Positions 17,292 through 62,666 are shown, counted from the stretch's first letter. The stretch is 64,000 nucleotides of DNA from Mobula birostris (GCF_030028105.1 NC_092374.1:8856998-8920997), one strand, 5' to 3'. Notes: generated by a model from the sequence alone, not told the origin. Numbers and translations are program-made.

Positions 17292-17340
17292 ATGCTGGCT
17301 GTCCTGCTCTGTATAATCGTCTGTGTTTTTTCCACTGGGG
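17292..17340 (+). CDS. Siglec-15-like gene, exon 1 (signal peptide MLAVLLCIIVCVFSTG)
   Basis: ATG followed by a 16-residue hydrophobic leader, ending G|GTGAGT (strong phase-1 donor). It splices in frame to the 23032 exon. FSTGG resembles the LPTGS leader end of mammalian Siglec-15. Confidence 0.8.
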
Positions 17341-18375
17341 GTGAGTATCTCACAGTGTGAGGCACAAACTTATTCCACTCCAGAGTAAATGTGGTCAGAG
17401 TTTAACCCTCTTATCCTGGACTATGTTAGCACTAAACCCACCCATCAGCTCACTCACTTGCTGAGAACCCCCTGTGTTGGGACCGACCAAATCCCTTTGG
17501 CGAGCTGGGCAGTCCAACATAACGTTTGAAATCCGTGCTGAGATTTGAAAATCTCTTGCCTTTCTAATGCAGCAGTGGAGGGAAACCTGAGATGCTGCAG
17601 GCGGGAAGGGGTCTCAACATTAGATGGATGGGGTGAGAAGATACTTCATCATTCCCAGTGGGAAGAAACTTCGGAAGTCTTTCTCCCAGAGGGCACAGGG
17701 ATTCGAGAGCATTAGAGAGAGGAATGAATTGATTTCTGGATGTTGAAGTAATTGAGAGGTATGGGGCTAGAGCGAGAAAGTGGGGCAGAAATAAAAGATG
17801 GGCTGTGATATTATTGAACAGGAGGTCAGAATTGAGGGGATGGAAAGGTTATTCCCACTTCAGATTCTTGTTTCTCTCATGTCCTTTTGTTTGACGGCAT
17901 TCTGGTAACAAACCATGGATAAGTGTACTAGGAGCCGGTTAATGATTCACTGGCAACCAGGCTGAGGAATCCACAATGGTTTATGACTGATAATCGAGGG
18001 GCTGGGGAACACACAGCAATGAAGTAAACCATTCAACCCAGTCAGTCATTGCTCTGTTAGTTACATCAAACACCATCACAGGATCTTCTTTCCTTTTCTC
18101 CCTGAAGCAAACAGCATGGAAACAAGCCCTTCAGCCCAATTTGCACGTGCCGATTGAGATATCTGTCTGAATTAGTCCCTTTTGCCTGCATTTGATCCAT
18201 GTAACTCCAACCCTTTCCTGCCCCCGTGTACCTGTCCAAGTGCTTTTTTAAACACTGTAGTTTTACCTACTTTTACCACTTCCTCTGGCAGCTCATTCCA
18301 CACACCCACTACCAGCAGTGTTCCGAATCAGAATCAGTAATCAGGTTTAATATCACTGACGTGTAATGTGAAACT

Positions 18376-18376
<1 letters not shown>

Positions 18377-18414
<38 letters not shown>

Positions 18415-18490
18415 TAGAGGGGAGGGAGGGAGGGAGAGAGGAGGGAGAAAGACAAAGAGAGTGAGTGTGTGTGTGTTCACACACACAAAC
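18377..18490. repeat. Compound (GT)n(GA)n microsatellite
   Basis: Direct reading of the sequence. Confidence 0.95.
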
Positions 18491-18916
18491 ACGGGGTGAT
18501 TGATAAGTTCGTAGCCTAAGGTAGAAGGAGTCAATTTTAGAAAACCTAGCACATTTACTTTTCAACACAGTCCCCTCCTACATTTACACACTTAGTCCAG
18601 CGATCGTGGAGCATAGGGATCCCTTCCTTGTACAAGTGGTTCACAGCAGGGGTGATGGATAAGTTCGTGGCCTTGGGTAGAAGGAGATCAGTTATACAGC
18701 TCTTGATACATGCACGTGCAGTTCAACTCTTTGAGTGAAAATGCAGGAAGTTTGAAGTTAATAACTCATCTCCTTCTACCTTAGGCCACGAACTTATCAA
18801 TCATCCCGAGCGTGCGCGCGTGTGTGTGTGTATGTAAGTAATACAAATTAAACAACCTAAGAATGTAATGCAAAAAGAACAAATGACAGTGTAAATCCAA
18901 CTGGCTTGATTTGTTT

Positions 18917-18976
18917 AAGCAACACACATCAAAGTTGCTGGTGAACGCAGCATCTGCAGAATTCCTCGTGTTTGCG
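18917..18976. mobile_element. 60-bp Penelope-tail insertion with internal inversion
   Basis: 15-bp TSD TGGCTTGATTTGTTT at 18902-18916 and 18977-18991. Confidence 0.8.
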
Positions 18977-19134
18977 TGGCTTGATTTGTTTGTCATCTTT
19001 CACCATCTCTCCCCTCCGCCCCTCACTCCAGCCTATTAGCCCCTTTCTCCTTCTCCGCCTCCCCTTTTCATACCGGCTATCTGACCCCTCCCCTCTCCAC
19101 TCTGAAACCTGATTGCAGGGATTCAACCCTGAAG

Positions 19135-19990
19135 GTTAACTTCAAGGATGAGTCTGTGGGAAGGACGGTAAATGTAATAATAGCATTCATTTTGAGAGCA
19201 CTGGACTGGAATATAAAAGCAAAGATGTAATGCTGACGCTTTATAAAGCATTGGTCAGACTGCATTTCAACCATTGCGAGCAGTTTTAGACCCCATATTT
19301 AAGAAAGGATGTGCTAGAATTGGAGAGGATCCACAAGAGGTTCACGAGAATGATTCGAGAATGAAAGGGTTAATTTGATGGTTCTGGGTCTGTACTTGCT
19401 GGAGTTTAGAAGAATAAGGGGGGAAATTTCATTGAGACCTGCCGAATATCTAGATAGAGTGGATGTGGAGAGGATGTTTCCTATAGTGGATGAGACCGGA
19501 GGGCACAGCTTCAGAATATAAGGGTGTCCCCATAAAACAGAGTAGAGGAGGAACTTAAAAACGCAAACATGAGGAAATCTGTAGATGCTGCAATTTCAAG
19601 CAACACATATAAAAGTTGCTGGTGAACGCAGCAGGCCAGGCAGCATCTCTAGGAAGAGGTACAGTTTGACGTTGGCTGTACCTCTTCCTAGAGATGCTGC
19701 CCGGCCTGCTGCGTTCACCAGCAACTTTTATATGTGTTGCTTGAGGAGGAATTCCTTTCACCAGATGGTCATGAATCTGTGGAAGACATTGCTACAGATA
19801 GATGGCTGTGGAGGCTGTCAATGGACATACTCAAAGAGGGGCTTGACAGGTACTTGATTAGTAAAGTTTATCAGGAGAATGAGTTTGAGAGGGATAATAA
19901 ACCGGCCATGATGGAATGGTGGAGCAGACTCGATGGGCCGAATAGCCTGATTCTGCTCCTACAGTATGCCTTATAGTCTTATGTTTAGTT
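19135..19990 (+). mobile_element. CR1 3' fragment, interrupted by a palindromic insertion
   Basis: ctggaatataaaagcaaagatgtaatgctg..gagtttagaagaataaggggg RT end and 3' UTR. Confidence 0.7.
19554..19742. mobile_element. Palindromic Penelope-tail insertion in a CR1 fragment
   Basis: Inverted arms of about 70 bp; TSD GAGGAGGAA at 19545-19553 and 19743-19751. Confidence 0.8.
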
Positions 19991-20047
19991 CATTGGGCCA
20001 GCCGCAGTGACAACCGGCTCTGCAGCTGTGAACTCACTTTTGTGAAC

Positions 20048-20265
20048 AAGAGAAAATCTTCAGATGCTGGAAATCCGAGCAACACACAAAATGCTGAAGG
20101 AACTCAATGGACCAGGCAGCATCTGTGGAAAAAAGTACAGTTCATGTTTTGGGCTGAGACCATACTCCAGTCCGGCCAAAGGGTTTCGGCCTGTAACGTC
20201 AACTGTACTTTTTTCCACAGATGCTGCCTGGTCTGCTGAGTTCCTCCAGCATTTTGTGTGTGTTG
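20048..20265. mobile_element. Palindromic Penelope-tail insertion (second subfamily)
   Basis: Inverted arms with two decayed HHRs at the centre; TSD CTCACTTTTGTGAAC 20033-20047 / CTCACTTTCGCGAAC 20266-20280. Confidence 0.72.
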
Positions 20266-20819
20266 CTCACTTTCGCGAACTTTAGTTATTTGCTTTTTAT
20301 TGTTTGCACGATTTTTTTTGCCAATTGGGTGTTTGACAGTTTTCATCTTCAATTGGTTCTACTGTGTTTCTTTATTTTGTGGCTGCCTGCAAGGAGACAA
20401 ATCTCAAGATTCTATATAATATAGAGACTTTGATAAATACGCTTCAAACTTTGATTCCCCCGACCAATGTTGAGTTCCTGCTGCAGATTGCGCGTTGGTC
20501 CAGATTTTAGCACCTACAGTCTCTTGTGTTCTCCTACACATTTTGCTGCTGTTATAAGAGGAAGCTAGTTTTGAGTAGTGGGTTCCATTCTTGCCTCTGA
20601 GTCTGAATGTAGTCGGTTTAAGTGACCAAACAGAGACTCCAGGACGACTATCTGATGCAGCAATGGATGGGATTGATCCCAGGACACTGTGCAGAGGATG
20701 GAGTGCATCACTTGAAGTTCAACTCAATGGTTTGAAGGTTGGTGCCAATCCTCTCCTGCTCTGCCGAAGGACTATGAGCTCACTTTCAAAGTCACTACAA
20801 CTCATGTTCTCAATATTAT

Positions 20820-21665
20820 TTATTCCTTATTTATCTTTATACTTTATACTTTATTGTCGCCAAACAATTGATACTAGAACGTACAATCATCACAGCGATA
20901 TTTGATTTTGCACTTCCTGCTCCCTGGATTACAAATATTAAATATTAAAAATATTTAAAATAGTAAAAATTAGTAAATATTAAAATTTGAAATTATAAAT
21001 AGAAAATAGAAAAATGGAAAGTAAGGTAGTGCAAAAAAACTGAGAGGCAGGTCCGGATATTTGGAGGGTACGGCCCAGATCCGGGTCAGGATCCATTCAA
21101 CAGTCTTATCACAGTTGGAAAGAAGCTGTTCCCAAATCTGGCCATACAAGTCTACAAGCTCCTGAGCCTTCTCCCAGAGGGAAGAAGGACAAAAAGTGTG
21201 TTGGCTGGGTGGGTCGTGTCCTTGATTATCCTGGCAGCACTGCTCAGACAGCGTGCGGTGTAAAGTGAGTCCAAGGCCAGAAGATTGGTTTGTGTGATGT
21301 GCTGCGCCGTGTTCACGATCTTCTGCAGCTTCTTTCGGTCTTGGACAGGACAACTTCCATACCAGGTTGTGATGCACCCTAAAAGAATGCTTTCTACGGT
21401 GCATCTATAAAAATTAATGAGGGTTTTAGGGGACAGGCCAAATTTCTTTAGTTTTCTCAGGAAGTGAAGGCGCTGGTGGGCCTTCTTGGCAGTGAACTCT
21501 GCTTGGTTGGACCAAGTCAGGCCATTTGTGATATTGACCCCGAGGAGCTTAAAGCTTTTGACCTGTTCCACTTGTGCACCACCGATGTAAATTGGGTCGT
21601 GCGGTCCGCTACTCCTTCTGAAGTCAACAACCAATTCCTTTGTCTTACTGACGTTGAGGGATAGG
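20820..21665 (-). mobile_element. Rex1-like 3' fragment
   Basis: NLSLNVSKTKELVVDFRR..KKAHQRLHFLRKLKKF..LPSGRR. Confidence 0.85.
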
Positions 21666-21689
21666 TTATCTATTATTATTCTTACTTTG

Positions 21690-22660
21690 TTTGTCTTTTT
21701 GTATTTACACAAAAAGAAAGGTGGTGACGAACCGGCGTATAGGAGGGAGATTGAAAATCTGTTCGAGTGGTGCCATCGCAACAACTTCTTACTCAATGTC
21801 AGCGAGACTAAGGAGCCTGTTATTGACTTGAGGAGGAGGAAACCAAAGGTCCATCAGAGGATCAGGGTTGGAGAGGGTCAGCAACTTTAAATTCCTCAGT
21901 GTTTTTATCCTGGATGACCTGTCTTACACCCAGCACGTAAGTGCAATCATGAAGAAAGCACAGCAGTGCCTCTACTTCCTTAGGAGTTTGCAAAGATTCA
22001 GCATCACATCTAAAACTTTGACAAACTTCTATAGATATGTGGTGGACAGTATATTGACTGGCTGCATCACAGCCTGGTGAGCAAACACCAATGCCCTGGA
22101 ACAGAAAATCCTACAAAAAGTAGTGAATATGGCCCAGTCCATTGCGGGTAAAGCTCTCCCCACCATTCAGCGTGCCTATATGAAACACTGTTGCAGGAAA
22201 GCAGTACCCGTCATCAGGCTCACCACTGTCCAGGAGATGCCCTCTTCCCGCTGCTGCCATCAGGAAGAAGGTACAGGGCATCAAGATTCTCACCACCAGG
22301 TTTAGGAATCGCTATTACCCCTCAGCTATCAGGCTCTGGAGCCAAAGGGGATAACCTTACTCAACTTCATTTCATCGTTGAAATGTTTGCACAGCTTATG
22401 GACTCACTTTCAAGGGCTTTTCATCTCATGTTCTTGATATTTGTTGTTTACTTATTATTTCTTTCTTTTTCGTATTTGAATAATTTATATCTTTTGCACA
22501 CTGATTAAACACTCAAGTTTGTGTGTTCTTTTATTGTTTCAATTATAATTATTATTATTTTATTATGGATTTATTGCGTATGCCAGCAAGAAAATGAATC
22601 TCAGGGTTCTACAGTACATGGTGACATACATGTACTTTGCTAATACATTTACTTTGAACT
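21690..22660 (+). mobile_element. Rex1-like 3' fragment
   Basis: WCHRNNFLLNVSETKE; KKAQQCLYFLRSLQRF; TTTGAACTTTG tail. Confidence 0.8.
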
Positions 22661-22780
22661 TTGAAAAGTTGTCTTTTACACATTGGTTGTTTGTCTGTAG
22701 TTTTTCATTGATTCTCTTTTGTTTCTTTGTATTTATTGTGAATGCTTGCAAGAATATTCTTCCCACATTCCACAGTTATG

Positions 22781-22870
22781 CTGGTTAGTAGGTTAATTGG
22801 TCATTATAAATTGTCCTGTGATTACGCTGGTTAGTAGGTTAATTGGTCATTATAAATTGTCCTGTGATTA
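22781..22870. repeat. Tandem duplication of a ~44-bp SINE-derived segment
   Basis: GCTGGTTAGTAGGTTAATTGGTCATTATAAATTGTCCTGTGATTA occurs twice. Confidence 0.9.
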
Positions 22871-23031
22871 TTGGTTAAATAGATGGGTTTCTGGGCTGTG
22901 TGGCTCACTGAATCGGAAAGGGCTATTCCACGCTATCTCTCTAGACAAAATTAAATAAACTGAATCTCAGGTTAATAAAGGTGACATATATATGTAATTT
23001 GATAATATTTAATTTACTTTGAACTTTGCAG

Positions 23032-23448
23032 GCCTCCATCGTAATGGCAGGAGCCTGGAGAGACCGGATATGGTGACATGGAGTGTGGAGAGCCCGGACA
23101 CGGTGATAGGGAGGGTAGGAAAGCCAGTGGTTCTGTTCTGCACGTTCACTCACCCTCACCATGCGTACAGAGGGAACATCAGCGTCAGCTGGAGGGAAGA
23201 GAAGACGGGCAAGTGGTTTCTCAATTACACCAATTACCCTTCGGGCAATGGGTTTGCCAGTTGGATCCAAGAGAGTGCAGGGGAGCGCTACCAACTAGTG
23301 GGGAGTCCGCGGCGGAACGACGTGTCCATAATCATCAGGAGTTTGAGACCTTGTGATGACCACACGCAGTATACTTGCCTTGTGGAGCTGCAGGTGCACA
23401 GGAATCAGACAGCCCATAACTTCTCCCAAACACTTCTCATGGTAACAG
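23032..23448 (+). CDS. Siglec-15-like gene, V-set Ig exon 1
   Basis: ttgcag| acceptor, ACAG|GTGAG donor, phase 1/1, 417 nt. WSVESP..VLFCTFTHPHHAYRG..WRE..RYQLVGSPRRNDVSI..YTCLVE matches the Siglec-15 V motifs CTFTHPH..Y.G and R..L.GNPRRNDLS as recalled. Confidence 0.92.
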
Positions 23449-24229
23449 GTGAGGAACTGTTCCAATTGGCTTGTGGATTATTCAATACAAAGCATCACTT
23501 AACAGACATATTACTGCTTCCACTGATTCGTTGAAAGTATACAATTAATTTCACACCCCCATTGTCCTCCCCTCGATTGGAACTCATCCAAGTCCAAACC
23601 CAATCACAGGAACATCTTTCTTTGAGCTGCCACTTGCATTTTTATTCTCTCCTTATTTGGTCCTTTGTCCAGTTCTGCTTGAGGCACTCAGTAATGTCCA
23701 GTTTCTTTAAGGATACTCCTTATGGTTATTAAGTCCAATCCTCTATGAAGTCTCCCATCCCACTTTAACATTTTTCTTTGGAATGCTGCCAAAAATTCAT
23801 AAGTAAGAAGATTAACTTAATTTGCCAAAATATCCAGTGAAATAGAAAGGGTTATCGGAATGCAGAAGAATGAGGGGTGATCTCAATGAAACCTATCGAA
23901 CGTTGAAAGGCCTCGATCGAGTGGATTTAAGATAGGATGTTTCCTATAGTGGGGGAGTCTAGGTCCAGAGGACACAGCCTCAGGATAGAGGGACATCCCT
24001 TTAGAACGGAGGTGAGGAGGACTTTTTTCAGCCAGAGAGTGGTGAATCTGTGGAATTTGTTGCCACAGTTGGCTGTGGGGGCCAAGTCAAGACAGGGGTT
24101 AATAGATTCTTGATCAGTCAGGGCACGAAGGGTTACAGGGAGAAAGTAGGAGACTGGGGCTGAGAGGGAAATGAATGAGCAGTGGTGAAATTGTGGAGCA
24201 GACTTGATGGGCCAATTGGCCTAATTTTG

Positions 24230-24495
24230 TTAACAACCAACACAGCCCAAAGTTGTGCTGGGGGAGCCTATAAGTATCGCCATGCCTCCACCACCAACAG
24301 TACAGTGCCCACAACTTACTAACCCTCACCTGAACATCTTTGGAATGTGGGTGGAAACCAGGGCACCCAGAGGAAGCCCTTGTGGTCAAGGGGAGAACGT
24401 TCAATTCCTTACAGAGAGTGGCAGGAATTGAACGGCAGTCGCTAATCGCTGGCACTGTAAAGCATTAAGCTAACCACTATGCCACTGTGCCACCA
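24230..24495 (-). mobile_element. V-SINE (HE1-like)
   Basis: Reverse complement of the tRNA head and V-domain. Confidence 0.7.
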
Positions 24496-24829
24496 ACTGT
24501 TTTGAAAGTGTTAAGTTGTAGTTACCCTCATCAATCCCCCGCCCTACAAATGACACAACTCAAGATGTCCTACCTCTGAACACTGGCTATCTTATCATCA
24601 AATCCTGCCCTAGAGAGTTACCCCCACTCTCCACACTGAAAGACACGAGCAGAGTCTTGCCCCATTGGAAGTGGCTTCCTTCAGATGAGATGATAAACTA
24701 TGGTCCAGTTAGCTCACTAAAGTGATCAGAAAAGACCCCATAGTACCATCTGCAAAAGCAGCAGAGGGTTTCTTCCTGATGACTCGGCCAATATCTTAAG
24801 CAACATCAATAAAACAGTTGACATTGTCC

Positions 24830-25560
24830 TTACTTTACTGTGCAGGTGGTGAAACAGTCTCTCACAGGGCGATGCATCAGTATCATGTATTGTATCAAAT
24901 GCAGCCTCCTCTATATCCAGGAGACCCAACATAGATTGGGGTCCACTTCACCGAACTCCTTTCTTCCCTGCTGCTGTCACACCAGGACCCTGCCGCAGCC
25001 AGCCAACTTAATTCCAATTCCCATTTCTACACCAATATGTCTGTTCATCGCCTCCACTATTGCCAGGATCAACCACCTCATATCCTGCCTTGGTAGTCTC
25101 CAACCTGAAGCATGAACATCATTTTCTTTAGCTTCTGGTAACCACTCCCCTCTGCCCCATTTTGATCAGTAATTACTAACCTCATCACTCTTCCTGCCTG
25201 CTCGCACATTCCACTCTCCAGTTCTCCTCCTCACTTCCTTCCCTTTGTTTCATGGTCCACTGTCCTCTCCTAACAGATTCCATCCTTTTCAACCCTTTAT
25301 GATCTCTACCTCTCACCTGCAGCTTCTTGCATCATTGCCAGTGATATCCATCCCTAACCTGCCAATCGCACCTCATTCACCTGTCACCCACCAGCTCTTG
25401 TTCCATCCCTCCCCCTCCTCTTTATTTCTTTATACTGTCTATCTCTCCTCTTTATTTCCAGTCCTGATGAAGGGTCTCAACCCAAAACATCATCTGCCTA
25501 TTTCCCTCCTGACTCACATAGTTCCTCCAGCTTTTCACGTGTTACTGCTTTATTGTTAGA
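24830..25560 (+). mobile_element. Older Penelope-like 3' fragment
   Basis: MYCIKCSLLYIQETQHRL GIY-YIG remnant, pyrimidine tract and decayed HHR near 25458. Confidence 0.65.
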
Positions 25561-25671
25561 TGTGGAAACTTTCTGAACGTCTGCTGTGCTTCTTGGTCAC
25601 CTTAGAGCATAAAATCGAGGGTCAGGAGTCAACCTAATGGAGCCTGCAACCTGCTCCACCATTCAATGATA

Positions 25672-26500
25672 TAAAGCAACACACATCAAAGTTGCTGGTG
25701 AATGCAGCAGGCCAGGCAGCATCTCTAGGAAGAGGTACAGTCGACGTTTCGGGCCGAGACCCTTCGTCAGGACTAACTGAATGAAGAGCTAGTAAGAGAT
25801 TTGAAAGTTGGAGGGGGAGGGGGAGGGGGAGATCCGAAATGATAGGAGAAGACAGGAGGGGGAGGGATGGAACAGTTGAGGCCAGTTCATTGGCTATATT
25901 TAAGAGGGAGTTAGATATGGCCCTTGTGGCTAATGGAATCAAGGGGGTATGGAGAGAAGGCAGGTACAGGGTTCTGAGTTGGATGATCAGCCATGATCAT
26001 ACTGAATGGCAGTGCAGGCTCAAAGGGCCGAATGGCCTACTCCTGCACCTATTTTCTATGTTTCTATGTTTTATGTTTAAGAGCTGGACAGTTGATTGGC
26101 AAAATGGATATGAGAGCATCATGAGGCCTAGGGAGAAAGAAAAGGGGTAGGGGGTAAGCCCAGAGGATGGGCAAGGAGTATAGTCAGAGGGACAGAGGGA
26201 GAAAAAGGAGAGAGAGAAAAAGAAAGTGTGTATATAAATAAATAAATAACGGATGGGGTACGAGGGGGAGGCGCGGCATTAGTGGAAGTTTCAGAAATCA
26301 ATGTTCATGCAATCAGGTTGGAGGCTACCCAGACGGAATATAAGGTGTTGTTCCTCCAACCTGAGTGTGGCTTCATCTTTACAGTAGAGAGGCCGTGGAT
26401 AGACATATCAGAATGGGAATGGGACGTGGAATTAAAATGTGTGGCCACTGGGAGGTCCTGCTTTCTCTGGCGGACAGAGTGTAGGTGTTCAGCGAAATAA
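25672..26500 (-). mobile_element. Penelope-like 3' fragment interrupted by a + strand CR1 3' fragment (about 25872-26070)
   Basis: Reverse complement of the 11.7-12.4 kb element (FAEHLHSVRQRKQDLPVATHFN); intact HHR. Confidence 0.8.
25739..25774 (-). ncRNA. Minimal hammerhead motif (intact core)
   Basis: Reverse strand AGTC-CTGACGA-A-GGG TCTCGG CCC-GAAA-CGTC^GACT. Confidence 0.75.
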
Positions 26501-26569
26501 TATAATGTGTCACCTTTGTGGTAGATTGGTTGTGGATAGTGTAGGAGTTTGTTGTAGATTATAATAGGA

Positions 26570-27410
26570 CATTGACAGGCTAGAGAGCTGGGCTGCAAAG
26601 TGGCAGATGCTGTTCAATCAGAAAAGTGTGAAGTGATTCACTTTAGAAGCTTGGACTTGAAGGCAGAGCACAGGGTTAATGTCAAGATTCTTAGCAGTGT
26701 GGAAGAACAGATGGATCTTGGGTTTCTCGTCCATAGACCCCTCAAAGTTGCTATGCAAGTTGATAGGTTGATTGAGAAGGTGTACGTTGTGTTGGCTTTC
26801 ATTAGTCAGGGTATTGAATTCTACAGCTGTGAGGTAGTGTTGCTGCTCTATAAAACTCTGGTTAGACTTTGGAGTATTGTGTTCAGTTTGGTTGCTTCAT
26901 TATAGGAAGGGTGTGGAACATTTACAGAGGGTATAGAGGAGATTTACCAGGACACTGCCTAGATTAGAGAGTATGTTTTTTGAGGTCAGGTTGAGTGATC
27001 GAGGGCTTTTCTCTTTGAAGCAAAGGAGGATGAAAAGTGACTTGATAGGGGTGGATAAGTTGATAAAAGGCATAAATAGGGAGTAGATAACCACAGTCTT
27101 TTCCCCAGGCCATAAATGTATAAACAAGAGGGCATAATGTTAAAGAGATTTTGGAGGAAAGTACAGTATATGGGGGATGTCAGATGTAAGGTATTTTTAC
27201 ACAGACAGTGGTGAGTGCATGGACTGTGCTGCAAGGGGTAGTGGTAGAGAGATAAATTAGGGACATTTAGAGATTCTTAGATAGGCACATGGATGATAGA
27301 AAAATGGAGGGTTATGTGGCAGGGAAGAATTAGATTGGTCTTGGAGTAGGTTAAAAGGTTAGCACAACAAAGTGGGCTGAAGGGCCTGTACTGTACTGTT
27401 CTATGTTCTT
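26570..27410 (+). mobile_element. CR1 3' fragment
   Basis: EKCEVIHFRS..QVDRLIEKVYVVLAFISQGIEF..LYKTLVR and 3' tail. Confidence 0.8.
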
Positions 27411-27728
27411 CATCATTTCCTGATCTTCATATCGATTGACTCCTCCAGACTCCAAAAGTCTATTCAAAATATAGTGACCTTGATTTCACAGCTCCCTGAG
27501 TAAAGAGACTATTCCTGTCTTTGGTTGTAAACAATCCTCCCATCTGTTGGGGGACCCCACACTCTGATTCAAGACCCTTCAGACATGGAGAACATCCTCT
27601 TACCATCTACCTTGGTAGGCAATTAGAAGATCTCAATGAGCTCAGTTCCCACTTTTCCCAGACCCAACGGATTTGCCCTGCTAGGTGTGATATGATCTCA
27701 CTTTCTCTTTCAGTTAATAGTTTCAGAC

Positions 27729-28041
27729 GTTGGCACGTGGCCAAGTGGTTAAGGCGTTCGCCTAGTGATCTGAAGGTCGCTAGTTCGAGCCTTGGCTGAG
27801 GCAGCGTGTTATGTCCTTGAGCAAGGCACTCAACCACACACTGCTCTGCGACGACACCGATGCCAAGCTGTATGGGTTCTAATGCTCTTCCCTTGGACAA
27901 CATCAGTGTTGTGGAGAGGGGAGACTTGCAGCATGGGCAACTGCTGGTCTTCCATACAACCTTGCCCAGGCCTGCACCCTGGAAACCCTCCAAGGCACAA
28001 ATCCATGGTCTCACGAGACTAACGGATTCCTATAAAAAAAG
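27729..28041 (+). mobile_element. Young tRNA-derived SINE
   Basis: A box TGGCCAAGTGG 27738-27748, B box GTTCGAGCC 27783-27791, GTCCTTGAGCAAGGCAC core, A-rich tail, TSD TAGTTTCAGAC at 27718-27728 and 28042-28052. Confidence 0.85.
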
Positions 28042-28549
28042 TAGTTTCAGACAAACACTGATGGGAACTTTTGGCTTATGGTGAAGGAAGTGTCTGCCAC
28101 TGGCCTCGAGCAGAGCCAACCACAAAGATCTAATAATATCTCTGGTTCAAAGTAAATTTATTATCAAAGTACATATACGTCGCTGTATACAACCCTGAGA
28201 TACATTTTCTTGCAGGCATACTCGGTAAATCCATAATAGAATAACAACTATAATAGAATCAGTGAAAGACCGGACCGATTTGGGTGGAGGGGGGGAGACC
28301 TGAGAGGTGTACAATATGATGAGATGCAGGGATGAGGAAAACTCTTCCATGGGCGGTCGCAGGCTCAGCTGCAGAAGGAGGAGGGTAGTGCATGGGGCTG
28401 GCAACCCCACCCCAGAGCTACAGAAATACCAACGAAAGCTCCAACGAGCTCATCTCTGGGAGTCGGAGGATCTTCACCTCGAGGACGTCTGACGGCATGT
28501 GGCGAAGGCAGAAACCACAGGGCTGATCCATCCACTTCAACTCCCATTC

Positions 28550-29040
28550 AGATATGTCCATACATGGCCTCCTCTACTGCCATGATGAGGCTAAACTCAG
28601 GTTGGAGGAGCAACACCTCATATACCGTCTAGGTAGTCTCCAGCCCCTTGGTATGAACATAGAATTCTCCAACTTCCCGTAATTCCCTCCCCCTCCCTTC
28701 CCCCATCCATATGTCACTCTGCCCCCTCCCCCAGCTGCCTACCACCTCCCTCATGGTTCTGCCTCCTTCTACTACCCATTGTGTTTTCCCCTATTCTTTC
28801 TTCACCTTTCCTGTCTATCCCCTCCCTGCCTCCCCTCCCCCACCCCTTTATCTTTCCCCTTACTAGTTTTTTACCTGGAACCTACCAGCCTCCTCCTTCC
28901 CACCCTCCCCCCACCTTCTTTATAGGGCCTCTGCCCCTTCCCTCTACAGTCCTGACGAAGGGTTCCGGCCCGAAACGTCGACTGATCGTTTCCACGGATG
29001 CTGCCTGACCTACTGAGTTCCTCCAGTGTGTTGTGAGAGT
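28550..29040 (+). mobile_element. Penelope-like 3' fragment
   Basis: End of GIY-YIG (HGLLYCHDEAKLRLEEQHLIYRLGSLQP), pyrimidine tract, intact HHR and tail. Confidence 0.82.
28948..28983 (+). ncRNA. Minimal hammerhead motif (intact core), sense strand in intron 2
   Basis: AGTC-CTGACGA-A-GGG TTCCGG CCC-GAAA-CGTC^GACT. Confidence 0.75.
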
Positions 29041-29175
29041 TGCTCAGAATAGAAAGATGTCCGCTTAGGTGGTATTTCTTTAGCCAGAGGGTTGTGAATT
29101 TGTGGAATTTATTGCCACAGGTGCCTGTGGAAGCCAAGTTATTACATAATTCTTTGCAACACTTCTCTATCCAAG

Positions 29176-29535
29176 GTGGTTTCAAAGCAACATCGGTGAT
29201 CGGGAAGAGGGGAGATTCTGCCAGACTGCCCTGTTCCTTCAGTCCCCTTGATAAGAAAGTTGCATCCATCACTATCCTCTGGATGAAGGGGAATCCTTGG
29301 AAAGGGTCCACTGTCTTCAATCAGACTCACTCCAGCTCCGTCAGCCCTCCCTACACCATCACTGTAAACGAAGGAGGTCACTATGAGCTGGTGGGAAACC
29401 CAAAGCAGGGAGACGCCTCCATCGGGGTGATGAACCTCAGAATGAATGACACCGGTGATTATTTCTGTTGTGTTTGGGTCAGGAATTCCACATGGGAAAC
29501 GGTGATTCAGGACGAGACAGGACTCCAGGTTATAG
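29176..29535 (+). CDS. Siglec-15-like gene, V-set Ig exon 2
   Basis: ctctatccaag| acceptor, ATAG|GTAAG donor, phase 1/1, 360 nt. Shows the V-set pattern RLPCSF..ILWMKG..YELVGNPKQGDASI..NDTGDYFCC. Confidence 0.88.
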
Positions 29536-30231
29536 GTAAGGAAACACCTTTGTCAGTGAGAACAGCAGCCGTAATTCTTGAGCCTTAGCATCGTTTGTCC
29601 TGGAGTGGATTTGATAGTGCTTCTCTTTATTCATAAGGAGATCGTGGCTAGCACCAGCATTTCTTACCCATCTGCACTCCCTTCTGCTCGGCAGAGTGGT
29701 GGCAGACTCCCTGTCTGACCTGCTGCTCTCCCTGTGGTGACGGTGCTCCCCCAGCACGTCTGAGCAGAAGCTCCCAGAATTTAGATCGAATTGGCAGCAT
29801 TTTGTTTCCAGGTCAGGGAGGTGTGTAACTTCAAAGTTACACAGTTTCAAATTCCACATCAACTTTAAATTAATTTCACTCAACTTCAACTTTCAAAGTA
29901 AATTTCCCATTAAAAACCATGTATGTTACCATGTACTAACTTGAGATTTGTTTGCTTACAGACATTTACAGGGAAAACGAAATGCAATAGACTTTTACAA
30001 AAAATACTATATGTAAGTTAGTATTACAGCACCAGTGACCAGTCTGTAAGGAGTTTCTGCTTTCTTCCTGTGACCACGTCATTTTCCTCCGGATTAATAG
30101 GTTAATTGGTTACATGGGCGTAAATGGGTGACACTGGGTCTTTGAACCAGAACAGCCTGTTACCCTGCTCTATCTCTAAATAAAACATCATGGAAGGGCC
30201 CCAGAGGACTCCAGGAGGAAATGGTGGTGGT

Positions 30232-30470
30232 GGGTCACGGTAGCCTAGCAGTTAGCATCACACTATTACAGTGAACTGGGTTCAATTTCTGCTGCTGTCT
30301 GTAAGGGGTTTGTATGTTCTCCCTGTGACCGTGTGGGTTTCCTCCGGGTGCTCCAGTTTCCTCCCACGTCCCAAAGGTGTACCGGTTAGTAGGTTAATTG
30401 TCACATGGTGTAATCGGATGCCGCGGGCTCCCAGAAAGACTGGCAAATGTTCAATGTACAAAAGAAAACA
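30232..30470 (+). mobile_element. V-SINE (HE1-like)
   Basis: GGGTCACGGTAGCCTAGC head; GTGGGTTTCCTCCGGGTGCTCCAGTTTCCTCCCAC V-domain. Confidence 0.8.
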
Positions 30471-31209
30471 AACTGTACTACCTCGAGATTCATTTTCTTG
30501 TAAGCTTGTGTAGCCCCCCGGCCAGCCTCAGGGTCCCTCAGCTCGCTGTCGTCTAGGGAAACAGCCCTCGGCCCCGCCAAACTGGGTAATTAGTTTGTGT
30601 GGATGCTGTGTGATGTACCCCACCCCGCCCAAATAACAGAGAATACACCAGATATGATTAAATGATTTACAGTTTATAGATATTACTGGAACTATATAAT
30701 TAATAGAGAATAAAATACGCTTGTAAGAATGCAATAAAATTTATGAAATACCAGACATAAAGGAAGACCGACAAATAATCAATGCATAAGGGAATTCAGA
30801 CTATGTAAATTAAAACAATACTGTGAACGCGAGTTGCAAAGAGTGCTTGAAAGAGAGTCTGCAGGTCGTAGAATCAGTTCAGTGTTATGGTGTGGGGCCT
30901 GAGGCTCCTGTACCTCTTTCCTGACGGTAGTAGCAAGAAGAGGGACTGGCCTGGGAAACTTGACAGTATTTCTCTGTGCCTGTCATTCAAAGGTGGTAGA
31001 AGTTCGTCATGGGACTGACGGGTGCTGGCAAAGAAACTGTGCAAGGTGTTAACTGCAGCCTCAGTGCAGACTACTGGAATTTTACAACACAGAGCAAAGC
31101 TATTTGGCCTGTTTGTCTCTGTTGCCATTTAGAAAGCATTGCCCACTCCCTGCTTCATCTGCAGAGCGCCACAATCATTCCCCATTGAGCACATATCTAA
31201 TGGCATAAA

Positions 31210-31840
31210 GATTAGATTAGATTATGAGGACATGCAGTTTTCTTTTATTGTTATTTAGTATGCATCCATTAAGAAATGATACAATGTTTCTCCAGAATGA
31301 TATCACAGAAACACATGACAAACCGACTGAAAAACTGACCAAAAACCACATAATTATAACATATAGTTACAACAGTGCAAAGCAGTACCGTAATTTGATA
31401 AAGAACAAACCATGGGCACGGTAAAAAGTCTCAAAGTCTCTTGAAAGTACCATCATCTCACGCAGACGGTGAACCTCCAGCGCCGCCAACTTGCCGATGC
31501 AGCATCCTGGAAGCATCCGACCACAGTCCGACTCCAAGTCCGTCTGAAAACTCCGAGCCTCCGACCAGCTCTCCGGCACCGAGCATCGAGCACCATCTCT
31601 GCCGAGCGCTTCGACCCCAGCCTCAGCAACAGGCAATACGCAAAGCTGAGGATTTGGGGCCTTCCCCTCCGGATATTCTCGATCGCACAGTAGCAGCGGC
31701 AGCGAAGTGGGCATTTCAGAAGTTTCTCCAGATGTTCCTCCGTGATTCTCATGGCTGTCTCCATCAAATCAGGATTGTGCACAGCCCCCTAGTTAACACA
31801 TACGACATAATTCGGAACGGCTGCGTGGCGCCGCCATTTG
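31210..31840 (-). mobile_element. About 630-bp non-coding interspersed repeat, copy 1 (putative non-autonomous LINE derivative)
   Basis: Homologous to 41241-41735 and 54480-55157; minus strand starts AAATGGCGGCG and ends in (TAATC)n. Confidence 0.7.
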
Positions 31841-32689
31841 ATAAAGGTCAAATTTACTGTCGCTTTATCTCATGACAATATCAGTGATTCTGACCTGATT
31901 CAAAGTTCGAGATACATTTACTTCAAAGTATGTATACATTATACAACCTTGAGATTCGTCTCCTAACAGGCAGCCACTAAACAAAGAAACCCAAAAGAAC
32001 CCATCAGAAACAGACTGTCAAACACTGCAGAGAGAAAAGTAAATCATGAAAACAATAAACAAAAGCAAATAGCATTCTGAACTGAACTGAGATACAGCGG
32101 AGAAACAAACTGCATGGTAGCGCACCAGTTAACGCAATCACATGACCGTGCCAAAGGTCACCAGGGTTCAATCCCTTACCGCTATGTGTAAGGAGTTTGC
32201 TCATTCTCCCATCGCCACATGGGTTTCCTTCCCCTTCCCACAGCAGTGGAGCAGTGCGCGAACAGGAAACTTATCTGTCAGCTCCACACGGCTGCTTCCT
32301 ATACCGGTCATTCCCTCAGGCTGACTGACACAGTGGTGTAAGTGAGAGGATAGTGTATCAAGGATCACCTTTGTTTGCCATATGCATTTACATATACTCA
32401 GAATTTGTTGTGGTGTGCTGGTCAGGGTGCAGCATGTAACAAAAAAACAACATATGGAATAAAAGGTGCATAAATATATAAATACCCACGGGTGCTAACT
32501 ACGAAGGTTGATCAGATTAACTGCCTGGGGGAAGAAACTTTTAAGATGGTGTGCAGTTTTTGTTTTAATTGCCCTATGGTGCTTTCCAGAAGAGAGCTTT
32601 TGGAGAAGGCAGTTTGCAGGATGGGTAGTGTCCAATAATGTAGCCTGCCTGCTCCTTTGTTCTGGACACGTACAAGTCCTACAGTGATG

Positions 32690-33244
32690 TATATGGGGTG
32701 TCAAGGAGGGGTAGCACCTCTGGTGGAGGAACATGTCGCGTCCTTTTCAGGGCGGTTAGTCCACCTTTGGTCCCCACCTGGCACTCAGCTCTCACCTGTG
32801 GCTCCCCGTAGCTGTTTGCATGCGACAGCGGCCACACCCGGGCAACGGCTTCGACAAGCGGGCTAAACCAGGTGAGGGTAGCCGACGGGTCTCAAACCCT
32901 CGGTGAGATAGGGAGTTGTCTATCCCAGCATGTGAAGACAGACTCCGGCGGATTGAGCGGACGAGACCAATGGAAGGCCCAACGGTCAAGAAGGCGGTCT
33001 CTGCAAGCGTCGTGGAACGTGTAGAGCAGGACAAGACACAGGAGACGTCCTGGTCATCCACTGCGCCTAGTCCCATCTCCAGCCGTCTAGACTCTGTCTT
33101 GCCACTGGACATAGATGGGAATTGGGAAGAGAGAGTGAGGCTGACGCTGCGCAACTCTCCCTCACTTAAATCCAAATCATGCGCTAGTCTCGACACCATC
33201 ATAATGGTGTCGAGGTCCTCTTTGACGTCAATGATGGACGAACA
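32690..33244 (+). mobile_element. 555-bp non-autonomous retroelement with a 5' HDV-like ribozyme, probably RTE-related
   Basis: TSD ACAGTGATG at 32681-32689 and 33245-33253. Inserted in a Rex1-like fragment; ends in AACAAC; CpG-rich; no recognisable protein ORF. Confidence 0.75.
32695..32876 (+). ncRNA. Predicted HDV-like self-cleaving ribozyme
   Basis: P1 GGGTGT 32696-32701/ACACCC 32834-32839. P2 CTCACCTGT 32791-32799/ACCAGGTGAG 32867-32876. P3 GGC/GCC. L3 TCCCCGT. GGGCAAC after P1'. P4 around GCTT-CGAC-AAGC. J4/2 GCTAA with catalytic C at 32863. Confidence 0.72.
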
Positions 33245-33414
33245 ACAGTGATGGTTGACTGCAGTCAATGGCCTTTACTGCTGACCTGACAGTTCGCTTT
33301 AGTTTCTGTATATCGTGAGACATATATGTGATATAAACAGTATGAGGATTCCCCCTTCTGGGAAAGGTATGACCCGGACAAAAAGGACGGGTTGGAACTG
33401 AACCCAAGGCGGTC

Positions 33415-34345
33415 CAATATCCTTGCAGGCAGGTTTGCTGGAGCTGTTGGGGAGAATTCAAATGAACTTGGCAGGGGGCTTGGGAACTGGTGTGATAGGG
33501 CTGAATCCCACTGAATCGTGGCTGAATGAAGATTATAGCTCGGAGCTTAATATCCAAAGATACACATTCCATCGAAAGAACAGACAGGAAAGCAGAGGGG
33601 GTGGGCTCTCTCTGTAGGTAAAAACTGAAAACAAATCTTTATAAAGAAGAGATGTAGCATCAGGAGATGTAGAATCCTCGTGGGTAGAGTTAAGAAACTG
33701 GAAGGGTAAAAAGATCTTAATGTTCGTTATAAACATATCCAATGTTGGCATTCATTTTGAGAGGACTCGAATATAAAAGCAAGGATGTAATGTTGAGGCT
33801 TTCTATAGCTTTGGACAGACCACACTTGGAGTATTGTAAGCAGCATTGGGCCTCTTATCTGAGACAAGATGTGCTGGCATTGGAATGGGTCCAGAGGAGG
33901 TTCACGAGAATGGTTCTGGGAATGAAAGGGTTAACGCATAAGGATCGTTCGATGCCTCTGGGCCTGGACTCCCTGGAGTTTAGAATAACGGTGGGGGATC
34001 TCATTGGAACCTATCAAATATTGAAAGGACAAGATAGAGTGGACGCGGAGGGGATGTGTCCTACAGTGGGGGAAGGCACAGCCTCAGAATAGAGGGACGA
34101 TCCATTTAGAACAGAGATGAGGAGGAATCTCTTCAGACAAAGGGTGGTAAATCTGTAGAATTCATTGCCATGGATATTTGTGGAGAACATGTCATTGAAT
34201 ATGTTTAAAACTGAAGTTTTTATATAGGTTTTTGATTAATCAGGGCATCAAAGGTTTTGGGGAGAAGATAGAAAAACAAGGTTGAGAAGGATAATACATC
34301 AGCCATGATGGAGCATAATCAATGGCCTAAATCTGTTCCTATGTC
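33415..34345 (+). mobile_element. Rearranged CR1 fragments (ORF1 end, endonuclease piece, RT end)
   Basis: TESWLNED..RKNRQESRGGG; MLAFILRGLEYKSK..RPHLEYC. Confidence 0.72.
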
Positions 34346-34368
34346 TTATGTTCTAAACCCTTCCTCAA

Positions 34369-34405
<37 letters not shown>
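34369..34405. repeat. (CA)n microsatellite just upstream of the C2 exon acceptor
   Basis: Direct reading of the sequence. Confidence 0.95.
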
Positions 34406-34406
<1 letters not shown>

Positions 34407-34436
34407 TAATTTAATCAATTTTTGTTTCTCCTCGAG

Positions 34437-34817
34437 TCCCGGCCACCATCCTGGAGCTGTCTCTTGTGACTGATGATGACAGAGAGACTCTGGTGTGCAG
34501 GGCTGAAGGAGAACCCCCTGCAAGCATCACGTGGATCGGCCCTGAGAACAGCGCACTGCCCGCCAACGGTAGTGAGATGAGATTCACGCGAGATCCAGAG
34601 CGACATCAGGTTGTTGGGGAGCTTTCCCACCCCAGGACGGGAGGAAGCTACCACTGCGTGGCTGAGAATGGACACGGAAGAGACACGCGTGAGATTGACC
34701 TGTCCGCCACAGATAACAGTTACTCGAATTTCATCATCGGAATGCTGTGCCTGATTCCACTGATTAAGTTTCTTCTCCTTCTGATAACAGGCATCATTCT
34801 CTTCATTAAGATAAAAG
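34437..34817 (+). CDS. Siglec-15-like gene, C2-set Ig domain plus transmembrane exon with charged Lys
   Basis: LVCRAEGEPPASITW..GSYHCVAENGHG resembles Siglec-15 LCTAEGEPPPALAW..GRYTCTAANSLG. TM FIIGMLCLIPLIKFLLLLITGIILFI has Lys at 34766-34768. Phase 1 at both ends (ctcgag| acceptor, AAAG|GTACC donor). Confidence 0.88.
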
Positions 34818-36790: not shown

Positions 36791-38519
36791 TTTCCCAGTC
36801 TTCTTGTATACTGAAATCCTCCACGATTATCGCAATTTTACCCATTTTACATGGCAATTGATTGCAGTCAAATATTGTCCGTTGCCTGTAAGTTTGTTTG
36901 CTGTCCCTGTGTTTGTTTCCTCTAGGTGCTCCAGTTTTCTCCCATATTCCAAAAACGTACAGGTTAGGGTAAATAAGTTGTGGTCATGCTGTTTTGGTGC
37001 TGGCAGCATGGCGACGCTTGCTGGCTGCCTCCAGGATCTGTTCGGACTGTGTTCACATTGATGCAAAATAACGTATTTTAAGTGCAGTGAAATATGTCTT
37101 TTTGGGTCAGTGACCAACACTGTCTGAACATGTTCTAGAGACAGTTACCAAATGTGCCCTGCTGCCGGCACCAACATATGTATGTTTGATATTTCGAAGA
37201 ACAAGTGACAAATAAAGCTAATCTTTAGTCTTCGAGGTAAGATCTTTACCTTATTTTACTGATTAACTCTTGGTCTTCCAATTTTTGTTCCCTTGCCAGA
37301 GAACTGAAAGGTTCGTGCATTTACAACAATCCCCATTCACAATGAGTTTGAACACCTGGGGAGAGCGGTTTCTTGTATGTTGACGGAATGATTCTACTTA
37401 TTGACACACTATAATTCAAAAGACATGGCAATTCTGGACCATGGAAAACACAGCATCCACTGGAACACAAGCACTTCTATTTTGACCTATTCTTAGGGGT
37501 TTTACTAAAATGAACATCTTTGGAGAATGTTGTGAAAAGTTTGAAGGTTTGAATCTGGATGAAGGGTCTCGGCCTGACTCTTTGTACCTCTCTGCTGATG
37601 CTGCCTGACTTGCTGAGTTCCTCCAGCATTTTGTGTGTGTAACTGTGAATGGTATAATCTTTTCTACGTGAACCCTAATTGTGTTTACCAAAACTTTAAA
37701 AAGTGTCCTGACATGAGGATGCTATGTAAAAGAACATCTCCCTTTTGTACAGATTGTCCTTAGGTTATAAATAATTGACTTATGAACAAGCTCCTCAGCA
37801 TTAGTAAGTTCAAGTATACGTACGGGGGCTCTCTGAGTCACAGCAAGGTGTTCAGAAGCCTCACAGCCCAGAAGAAGCTGTGACCCAGCCGAACACTCTT
37901 TGTTTTTATTCTGTGGTACCTTCTGCCTGATGCGGATGTTGTATCTCCCCTTTCCAGTCCACCACCACGCAGAGAATAATAGTTGAAACACAAGAGGTTC
38001 TGCAGATAATGGAAATCTTGAGAAACACGCACACAATACTGGAGGAACTCAGCAGGTCAGGAATAAACAGTCGATGACTTGGGCCGAGACCCTTCATTAG
38101 GGCTCATCAGAAGGACTTCATTGGGAATAATAGCTTTCCGCTTTGAAAACAGAAGTGGATAACCACAAATTGATCCACTTCAACCTTTACCTGCCATGCA
38201 TTTTCCAGTGTGACTCAGTCATCAAAATGACTGCAGTTCTCGTGTTGATGTGTGCAAATGACCTTTTTGTCACCACAGACAAATGAATGAGTACCACCAG
38301 CGGTATGGACAAGGTGAACGCACACACTCTCTTTTGAAACCAGACGGCATGGGTTTAAGGTGAGAGGAGAGAGATTAAATAGAAATCTGGGAGACAACAT
38401 TTTCACCCACTGAAAATGAATCTCAAGGTTCATATGGTAACATATGTGCACTTTGATAGTCAATTTACTTCAAATTTTGTACAGATTCAAAATGCTCTAC
38501 TGTTGACATGATCTTCCCA

Positions 38520-62608: not shown

Positions 62609-62666
62609 ATGACCTTCCCTCCCCTCCTGCTCTTCCTAATACTCCTGACCGCGGTGGTCATCTCAG
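62609..62666 (+). CDS. Signal-peptide exon (MTFPPLLLFLILLTAVVIS-G) of a second secreted or type I membrane protein gene; remainder lies outside the window
   Basis: ATG, 19-residue hydrophobic leader and CAG|GTAGGT phase-1 donor, set in a non-repetitive CpG-rich region. Confidence 0.78.

What the first reader, a model, noticed from the sequence alone, without database searches (positions are those of the whole stretch)
17292..34817. Siglec-15-like activating receptor with an extra V domain (L-V-V-C2-TM)
Seen: four phase-1 exons giving about 402 codons. V1 and C2/TM carry Siglec-15-specific motifs, and a second, more divergent V-set exon lies between them. Established: mammalian Siglec-15 is V-C2-TM(Lys). 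Inference: a cartilaginous-fish paralog produced by V-exon duplication or shuffling. All exons are symmetric, so V2 could be skipped to restore the canonical V-C2 form.
Basis: partly seen in the sequence, partly recalled or inferred. Interest (0 to 1): 0.7.

Follow-up and report, generated by a model that had tools for sequence, protein, structure and literature searches.

The report
Manta ray two-V Siglec-15-like receptor
This is a real, intact manta-ray gene for an immune-type surface receptor related to Siglec-15 that carries an extra V domain; the same layout is found in sharks, rays and a chimaera and is already in public automatic annotation, so it is a useful but fairly ordinary family member.

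Summary
The four phase-1 exons are real. A fifth, 8-base coding exon (Glu-Asn-stop) completes a 404-residue protein: leader, V1, V2, C2, a transmembrane helix with a lysine, and a 2-residue tail.

- **Orthologs:** the protein is colinear with, and 96% identical to, RefSeq "sialic acid-binding Ig-like lectin 15 isoform X1" of Mobula hypostoma. The same V-V-C2-TM layout is predicted in at least 12 other rays, sharks and a chimaera.
- **Domain identity:** V1, C2/TM and the more distant V2 each resemble human Siglec-15 more than any other solved single domain.
- **V2 origin:** V2 forms its own well-supported clade, so it is an old extra exon, not a recent manta event.
- **Neighbour:** a single-V Siglec-15-type gene without the membrane lysine starts about 25 kb downstream on the same strand.
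- **Lectin site:** both V domains lack the arginine needed for sialic-acid binding (Leu in V1, Cys in V2). The V1 leucine is shared by 9 of 10 elasmobranch activating orthologs.
- **Not shown:** there is no evidence of V2 skipping.

Earlier reports of this scan described sister genes elsewhere in this genome.

The parts
17292..17340 (+). Exon 1: ATG plus signal peptide (16 codons + 1 base), GT donor, phase 1
   Evidence: sequence; translation. The translation is identical to the first 17 residues of M. hypostoma XP_062903800.1/801.1.
23032..23448 (+). Exon 2: V1, a V-set domain of Siglec-15 type (417 nt, phase 1-1). It has Leu where Siglec-15 has the essential Arg. It also carries a 30-bp in-frame tandem duplication at 23049-23108.
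   Evidence: V-set E 1e-7; 7zoz_A E 3e-14, with FCRVEF aligned to YTCLVEL.
29176..29535 (+). Exon 3: V2, a second and more divergent V-set domain (360 nt, phase 1-1). It has Cys at the Arg position.
   Evidence: V-set E 2e-14; hhalign V2 against V1: 99.2%, E 1.5e-19, 29% identity; V2 clade 99/96; model pLDDT 86; top fold hit 7zoz_A, TM 0.81.
34437..34817 (+). Exon 4: C2/I-set Ig domain, stalk and transmembrane helix with an intramembrane Lys (…IPLIKFLLLL…). 381 nt, phase 1-1.
   Evidence: I-set E 3e-8; 7zoz_A E 9e-7, aligned 18-119 to 166-262; Lys column shared with lungfish Siglec-15; TM 90% identical among 10 elasmobranchs; helix 369-403 in the ortholog model.
37300..37307 (+). Coding part of exon 5: completes Glu, then Asn and TGA. 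The 3' UTR follows and its extent was not determined.
   Evidence: polypyrimidine tract plus AG at 37298-37299. The orthologs end in ...IKIKEN. The 5-exon product is 404 aa and colinear with P0154.
62609..62666 (+). Context: leader exon of the neighbouring single-V Siglec-15-type gene, which has no TM Lys and a long tail. It is on the same strand, about 25 kb downstream. The rest of that gene lies beyond the N run and the window end.
   Evidence: ATG, 19 codons + 1 base, GT donor. The translation is identical to residues 1-20 of P0101 = XP_072113673.1, Mobula birostris.

Best explanation
Window 17292-37307 (+) holds an intact five-exon gene for a 404-residue type I membrane receptor. Its order is signal peptide, V1, V2, one C2-type Ig domain, a transmembrane helix with a central lysine, and a two-residue tail. 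It is the giant-manta counterpart of the gene RefSeq calls SIGLEC15 in Mobula hypostoma.

It belongs to a family with the V-V-C2 ectodomain that is present throughout cartilaginous fish. That family is related to Siglec-15 and lies in tandem with a single-V Siglec-15-type gene.

Inferred mechanism: the lysine pairs in the membrane with an acidic residue of a DAP12/DAP10-type ITAM adaptor, as in mammalian Siglec-15, so ligand binding gives an activating signal. The arginine that Siglec-15 needs to bind sialic acid is Leu in V1 and Cys in V2. The receptor therefore probably does not bind sialic acid in the canonical way, and recognises another ligand or uses another site. Long-tailed relatives without the lysine in the same genome and in other species make it one half of an activating/inhibitory paired-receptor system.

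Shown: the gene structure, domain identities, residues and conservation. Inferred: expression in manta, adaptor pairing and ligand type.
For: - **Gene model:** exons, phases and splice sites are.
- **Ortholog:** the product is colinear with XP_062903800.1, 404 versus 404 aa, with 16 substitutions and no indel.
- **Architecture in relatives:** the same layout is predicted in Hypanus, Pristis, Leucoraja, Rhinoraja, Cetorhinus, Heterodontus, Chiloscyllium, Rhincodon, Mustelus, Heptranchias, Narcine and Callorhinchus. The Ig core residues are invariant in both V domains.
- **Siglec-15 affinity:** Siglec-15 is the top PDB relative of V1, V2 and C2/TM.
- **TM conservation:** the TM segment is 90% identical on average among 10 elasmobranch orthologs, against 58-61% for the ectodomains. 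Its Lys aligns with the Lys of lungfish Siglec-15.
- **Functional residues from the literature:** the TM Lys is needed for DAP10/12 binding and R143 for sialic-acid binding in Siglec-15 (PMC7226832).
- **Arg column:** it is Leu in V1 of 9 of 10 elasmobranch Lys-bearing forms, Arg in the long-tailed paralogs and in Callorhinchus, and His/Cys/Tyr in V2.
- **Long-tailed V-V-C2 paralogs:** examples are P0003 (M. birostris), P0006, P0144 and P0147.
- **Neighbour gene:**
- **Ortholog model:** it folds as three Ig domains plus a TM helix, pLDDT 84.
Against:
- **This exact protein is not in the searched collections.** The 90% cluster holds only the three M. hypostoma isoforms. I cannot say whether the manta annotation has it.
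- **The adaptor is untested.** A manta DAP12/DAP10 was not looked for.
- **Loss of the Arg does not exclude non-canonical glycan binding.**
- **Relatives are automatic predictions.** All orthologous proteins are gene models, not cloned cDNAs.
Confidence: 0.75

Rival explanations
1. It is the true (co-)ortholog of SIGLEC15, not a separate paralog family. On this view SIGLEC15 duplicated in tandem in the cartilaginous-fish stem. This copy kept the ancestral DAP12-type lysine TM and gained V2. The single-V neighbour kept the ectodomain layout but lost the lysine and grew a long tail.
For: In the C2 tree the chondrichthyan single-V clade and the V-V clade are sisters (88/83) within Siglec-15. The TM motif with Lys resembles bird, mammal and lungfish Siglec-15, whereas the ray single-V genes lack the Lys. 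The V1 motif CTFTHPHxxYxGNI is closer to the mammalian one than that of the single-V shark genes. The genes are in tandem.
Against: In the V tree the single-V chondrichthyan clade groups, weakly (80/74), with bony-vertebrate Siglec-15 rather than with V1, and the backbone is a polytomy. The root rests on one distant CD22-like outgroup. The C2 tree places bony vertebrates in an order that conflicts with the species tree, so the root is unreliable.
Confidence: 0.35
2. V2 is a facultative exon and the main product is the canonical leader-V1-C2-TM form made by skipping V2.
For: All internal exons are phase 1-1, so skipping keeps the frame.
Against: V2 is retained, intact and conserved from chimaera to manta: mean column identity 66%, with invariant Cys, Trp and the D-x-x-x-Y-F-C motif. 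The predicted isoforms in M. hypostoma, Hemitrygon, Rhincodon and Scyliorhinus truncate V1 or V2 at internal sites, and none joins V1 to C2 cleanly.
Confidence: 0.07
3. The receptor is still a sialic-acid lectin, using a non-canonical site or the V2 domain.
For: Other Siglec-15-type residues of V1 are well kept. Non-canonical pockets are reported for other Siglecs (title of PMC10122656; the paper was not read in detail). One species (Rhincodon) has Arg at the V2 position and one (Mustelus) at the V1 position.
Against: R143 is required in Siglec-15 (PMC7226832). It is replaced by hydrophobic Leu in V1 of 9 of 10 elasmobranch orthologs, and V2 has His/Cys/Tyr in 12 of 13 cartilaginous-fish sequences.
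Confidence: 0.15
4. The locus is silent or a young pseudogene in this genome.
For: There is no RNA evidence. The protein was not found in the collections.
Against: All five exons are open and all splice sites are canonical. There are only 16 substitutions and no indel against a sister species.
Confidence: 0.05

Closest known systems
RefSeq XP_062903800.1 / XP_062903801.1, 'sialic acid-binding Ig-like lectin 15' isoforms X1/X2 of Mobula hypostoma, and the like-named models in Hypanus, Pristis, Leucoraja, Rhinoraja, Heterodontus and Mustelus
   Same: They have the same five-part layout and the same length (404 aa), and are 96% identical. The leader, the TM with Lys, the EN tail and the Leu/Cys at the two Arg positions all match.
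   Different: There are 16 substitutions, 11 of them in V2. These are automatic predictions without any functional study.
Mammalian and avian Siglec-15 (human structure 7zoz)
   Same: The V-set domain shares the CTFTHPH…Y.G and GNPRRND motifs. It is followed by one C2 domain and a TM helix with a Lys used for DAP12/DAP10.
   Different: This gene has an extra V domain between V and C2. The essential Arg (R143) is replaced by Leu. The tail is two residues instead of about 50. C2 and TM are in one exon here.
Neighbouring single-V Siglec-15-type gene of cartilaginous fish (P0101 M. birostris, P0105 Amblyraja, P0058 Carcharodon, P0182 Cetorhinus)
   Same: It lies at the same locus on the same strand. 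Its V and C2 domains are related, and its C2 clade is sister to this family.
   Different: It has a single V that keeps the Arg (YFCRVE). There is no central TM Lys in the ray forms, and the cytoplasmic tail is long.
Paired activating/inhibitory Siglecs, and human Siglec-12/XII, which has two V-set domains with the essential Arg lost in humans (from my own knowledge; PMC11343606 was listed but not read)
   Same: Lys-TM short-tail forms and long-tail tyrosine-motif forms share similar ectodomains. The Pristis pair differs in 8 of 89 C2 positions, 26 of 121 V2 positions and 62 of 121 V1 positions. There are two V domains and the lectin Arg is lost.
   Different: The descent is independent: these genes come from the Siglec-15 lineage, not the CD33-related lineage.

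Membership tests
Siglec-15 | N-terminal V-set domain most similar to the Siglec-15 V domain | tested here: met
   phmmer of V1 against the PDB gives 7zoz_A at E 3e-14, with the next family (myelin P0) at 1e-6. Pfam calls V-set.
Siglec-15 | Essential arginine on strand F (human R143), needed for sialic-acid binding | tested here: not met
   The aligned position is Leu in V1 (YTCLVEL against YFCRVEF) and Cys in V2. The requirement for R143 is stated in PMC7226832.
Siglec-15 | Ectodomain of one V-set followed directly by one C2-set domain | tested here: not met
   A second V-set exon (29176-29535) lies between V1 and C2 and is kept in all orthologs.
Siglec-15 | Lysine within the transmembrane helix (DAP12/DAP10 coupling) | tested here: met
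   The Lys in …IPLIKFLLLL… falls in the same alignment column as the Lys of lungfish Siglec-15. The PDB alignment to 7zoz_A runs through the TM. Actual adaptor binding was not tested.
Siglec-15 | Orthology by phylogeny or synteny | tested here: inconclusive
   The V tree is a polytomy, with the single-V chondrichthyan genes grouping weakly with bony-vertebrate Siglec-15 (80/74). The C2 tree makes the V-V family sister to the single-V chondrichthyan genes (88/83). No EPG5 or other marker gene is in the window.
Siglec-15 | Sialic-acid-dependent ligand binding | not testable with these tools
   This needs recombinant protein and glycan binding assays.
Chondrichthyan V-V-C2 Siglec-15-like family (Lys-TM subgroup) | Colinear leader-V1-V2-C2-TM(K)-minimal tail, with V1 and V2 each falling in the family's own clade | tested here: met
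   See alignment A1. The V tree gives the V1 clade 97/94 and the V2 clade 99/96, with the window sequence next to M. hypostoma. The C2 tree agrees.
Paired activating/inhibitory immune receptors | Counterparts with a related ectodomain but no TM charge and a tyrosine-motif tail | tested here: met
   P0003 (M. birostris), P0144 (Pristis), P0006 (Heptranchias, with ILYSSV and TLYSTV motifs) and P0147 (Narcine) fit this. Signalling itself was not tested.

The most novel reading that the evidence does not exclude
In cartilaginous fish the DAP12-coupled, 'activating' role of Siglec-15 is carried not by the single-V gene but by this two-V copy. That copy gave up sialic-acid recognition hundreds of millions of years ago: the V1 Arg-to-Leu change is shared by sharks and rays. 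It now senses a protein or other non-sialoglycan ligand, paired with long-tailed inhibitory twins. This would be an old, undescribed non-lectin branch of the Siglec-15 lineage.
Probability: 0.35. Interest if true: 0.55.

Novelty: new member of a known kind. Interest (0 to 1): 0.35.

Why it matters
Siglec-15 is called the one activating Siglec conserved throughout vertebrates, and it is a drug target in bone disease and cancer. This locus shows that in cartilaginous fish the lineage is a tandem gene family. The membrane-lysine (adaptor-coupled) form has two V domains and lacks the lectin arginine. The single-V form keeps the arginine but not the lysine. That split is useful for working out which Siglec-15 features are ancestral, and it offers natural variants for testing what the V domain binds. 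I found no paper in the searched library describing this family. It is, however, already present in automatic annotation, and it is one of many similar genes in this genome.

Tried and rejected
- **Reads.** No junction evidence could be obtained.
- **Sequencing runs.** The look-up of sequencing runs found holders of the C2/TM exon, with run X1 holding all sampled words, but none is on record as RNA. I make no claim of expression. Three calls were unanswered (17, 20, 42; also 35).
- **Ortholog locus.** The look-up of encoding contigs found no record for P0001. For P0154 it gave only the gene span (18.9 kb) and no neighbours within 10 kb, without DNA. Therefore no dN/dS and no exon-by-exon DNA comparison were possible.
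- **Whole-model fold search.** Foldseek of the full model against Swiss-Prot models returned only generic multi-Ig proteins such as CD276, CD96 and IgLONs, at TM < 0.4. This is uninformative for family membership.
- **Literature.** Searches for Siglec-15 in sharks or cartilaginous fish, and for DAP12 in cartilaginous fish, gave nothing relevant.
- **Spliced protein as query.** The full spliced window protein has no reference and I did not type it. The 96%-identical P0001/P0154 stood in for it in the searches, the alignment and the fold.
- **Rejected readings.** V2 is not a shuffled V from another IgSF family, because Siglec-15 is its top relative by sequence, profile and fold, although the margin over SCN4B, JAML and CAR is modest. 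The lungfish V-V Siglec-15 is not the same event, because both of its V domains sit inside the bony-vertebrate clade.
Full report
**Observation**

The leader (17292-17340) starts with ATG and ends at a GT donor after 16 codons plus one base. V1 (23032-23448, 417 nt), V2 (29176-29535, 360 nt) and C2+TM (34437-34817, 381 nt) each follow an AG and precede a GT. All are phase 1 to phase 1 and join into one open frame of 402 codons.

A strong polypyrimidine tract and AG at 37298-37299 are followed by AG AAC TGA, which completes Glu, Asn and stop. The product is 404 residues.

Pfam calls V-set for both V exons and I-set/Ig for the last large exon. tblastn of the three domains against the whole window finds no other Ig exon, only the V1/V2 cross-match at 29% identity. 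The rest of the window is mostly reverse-transcriptase ORFs of retroelements.

**What it is**

A full HMMER scan of 1.84 billion representative proteins with V1 returned, as best hit, a 402-residue protein with two matched stretches. It is XP_062903801.1, "sialic acid-binding Ig-like lectin 15 isoform X2" of Mobula hypostoma. Isoform X1 has 404 residues. The window's five-exon product is colinear with isoform X1, 404 against 404 residues, with 16 substitutions and no indel.

The leader of another gene at 62609-62666 is identical to the first 20 residues of a Mobula birostris protein. Earlier notes of this scan also name the genome as giant manta ray.

Searching with the M. hypostoma protein found the same leader-V-V-C2-TM layout in these genera:
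- Rays and skates: Hypanus, Hemitrygon, Pristis, Leucoraja, Rhinoraja, Narcine.
- Sharks: Cetorhinus, Heterodontus, Chiloscyllium, Rhincodon, Mustelus, Heptranchias.
- Chimaera: Callorhinchus.

NCBI's pipeline names many of them SIGLEC15. Others are named SIGLEC12, CD276-like, CXADR-like or uncharacterized. The architecture is therefore the standard form of an old cartilaginous-fish gene, not a manta event.

**Domain identities**

- **V1.** Human Siglec-15 (7zoz_A) is by far the best solved relative (E 3e-14; next is myelin P0 at 1e-6).
- **V2 by sequence.** Siglec-15 is the best single-domain match with the single sequence (E 2e-9) and with a 14-species profile (53.8 bits in one stretch). A triple-VH construct and CD276 score higher only by summing several stretches.
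- **V2 by profile.** The V2 and V1 profiles match at 99.2% probability, E 1.5e-19 and 29% identity.
- **V2 by fold.** The AlphaFold model of the window's V2 (pLDDT 86) has 7zoz_A as top Foldseek hit (TM 0.81, rmsd 2.7 Å). It is only narrowly ahead of sodium-channel beta-4, JAML and CAR.
- **C2/TM.** The exon matches Siglec-15 from the C2 domain through the membrane segment (E 9e-7).
- **Whole ortholog.** The model folds as signal helix, three Ig domains and a TM helix (pLDDT 84, pTM 0.71).

**Evolution**

In a V-domain tree (55 domains, IQ-TREE) V1 of the V-V family forms one clade (97/94). V2 forms another (99/96), which also holds the second V of skate V-V-TM receptors. Bony-vertebrate Siglec-15 groups weakly (80/74) with a separate single-V Siglec-15-type gene of sharks and rays. 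These clades meet in a polytomy that is set apart from a CD22-like and a newt outgroup. The two V domains of a lungfish V-V Siglec-15 both sit inside the bony-vertebrate clade, so that is an independent duplication.

In the C2 tree the V-V family and the single-V chondrichthyan genes are sisters (88/83) within Siglec-15, but the deeper order conflicts with the species tree, so the root is not trustworthy.

The single-V gene is the immediate downstream neighbour on the same strand. It remains open whether the duplication happened in the chondrichthyan stem (making this a co-ortholog of SIGLEC15) or earlier.

**Functional residues**

PMC7226832 states that the TM lysine of Siglec-15 is needed for DAP10/DAP12 binding and that R143 is needed for sialic-acid binding, and that both are conserved from fish to mammals.

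Here the lysine is present and sits in the same alignment column as that of lungfish Siglec-15. The TM segment is 90% identical on average among ten elasmobranch orthologs, against 58-61% for V1, V2 and C2. This argues for a tightly constrained intramembrane partner. The tail is two residues.

The arginine is absent from both V domains:
- V1 has Leu (YTCLVEL against human YFCRVEF). The Leu is shared by 9 of 10 elasmobranch Lys-bearing orthologs. Mustelus and Callorhinchus have Arg there, as do the long-tailed paralogs aligned here (Heptranchias and Pristis).
- V2 has Cys in Mobula, Tyr in Hypanus and His in most other species.

The single-V neighbour type keeps the Arg, and its ray members lack the central Lys. 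Long-tailed V-V-C2 relatives without the Lys exist in M. birostris and other species, and some carry ITIM/ITSM-like motifs. In Pristis the Lys form and the long-tail form differ in 8 of 89 C2 positions, 26 of 121 V2 positions and 62 of 121 V1 positions. This mosaic pattern is typical of paired receptors.

**Mechanism proposed**

I propose an activating member of a paired-receptor system that signals through a DAP12-type adaptor and has a non-canonical, probably non-sialic-acid, ligand. The gene structure and residues are shown. Expression in manta, adaptor pairing and ligand type are inferred.

**V2 skipping**

The exon phases would allow it. The predicted alternative isoforms in relatives instead use internal sites inside V1 or V2: M. 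hypostoma X3, Hemitrygon X2, Rhincodon X2 and a Scyliorhinus model. None joins V1 to C2.

**Limits**

- No run holding the exons is on record as RNA.
- Co-transcription therefore rests on the concordant automatic gene models of more than a dozen species.
- No DNA of the M. hypostoma locus could be fetched.
- The N runs (14368-14504 and 62743-63118) were left untouched.

**Novelty and score**

The protein family is in public automatic annotation, and sister genes of this genome were already reported in this scan. I found no paper on it in the searched library. It is a new, uncharacterised member of a known kind of receptor. The interesting points are the conserved extra V domain, the old loss of the lectin arginine, and the split of arginine and lysine between tandem neighbours. 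Interest: 0.35.

Noticed in passing
window 23049-23108: There is an in-frame 30-bp tandem duplication at the start of V1 (RSLERPDMVT / WSVESPDTVI). It is present in Mobula, Hypanus and Hemitrygon but not in Pristis, skates, sharks or chimaera. The ortholog model is disordered up to residue 29, which overlaps the first copy.
   Followed up: partly
window 62609-62666 (+), then N run 62743-63118: This is the leader exon of the neighbouring single-V Siglec-15-type gene. It is identical to residues 1-20 of XP_072113673.1 (Mobula birostris, 514 aa). That protein keeps the lectin Arg, has no TM Lys and has a long repeat-rich tail.
   Followed up: partly
window 29176-29535 (V2) against P0154: Eleven of the 16 amino-acid differences from the M. 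hypostoma ortholog fall in V2 (11/120 against 5/284 elsewhere, Fisher p = 0.001), and many change charge. This could reflect diversifying selection or relaxed constraint. No DNA of the sister species was available for dN/dS.
   Followed up: partly
P0135 against P0144 (Pristis pectinata): The Lys-TM form and the long-tail form are mosaics. C2 is nearly identical (8/89 differences) and V2 is similar (26/121). V1 (62/121) and TM (32/36) are very different. This suggests exon exchange or gene conversion within the pair.
   Followed up: partly
window 34380-34405: A (CA)n microsatellite lies about 30 bases upstream of the C2/TM exon acceptor.
   Followed up: no
window 46298-48319 (-), 9792-10970 (-), 42377-44377 (+), 21152-21796 (-): Long reverse-transcriptase-type ORFs of LINE-like retroelements fill the introns and the 25-kb spacer between the two receptor genes. 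The 673-aa ORF at 46298-48319 looks nearly intact.
   Followed up: no
They lie in the V2-C2 intron and were not examined further or sent to any search tool.
   Followed up: no
P0019, P0020, P0024 (skates): This is a related V-V-TM family without a C2 domain and with tyrosine-motif tails. Its first and second V domains fall beside the V1 clade and inside the V2 clade respectively, so the V1-V2 pair is older than the C2-bearing subgroup alone.
   Followed up: partly
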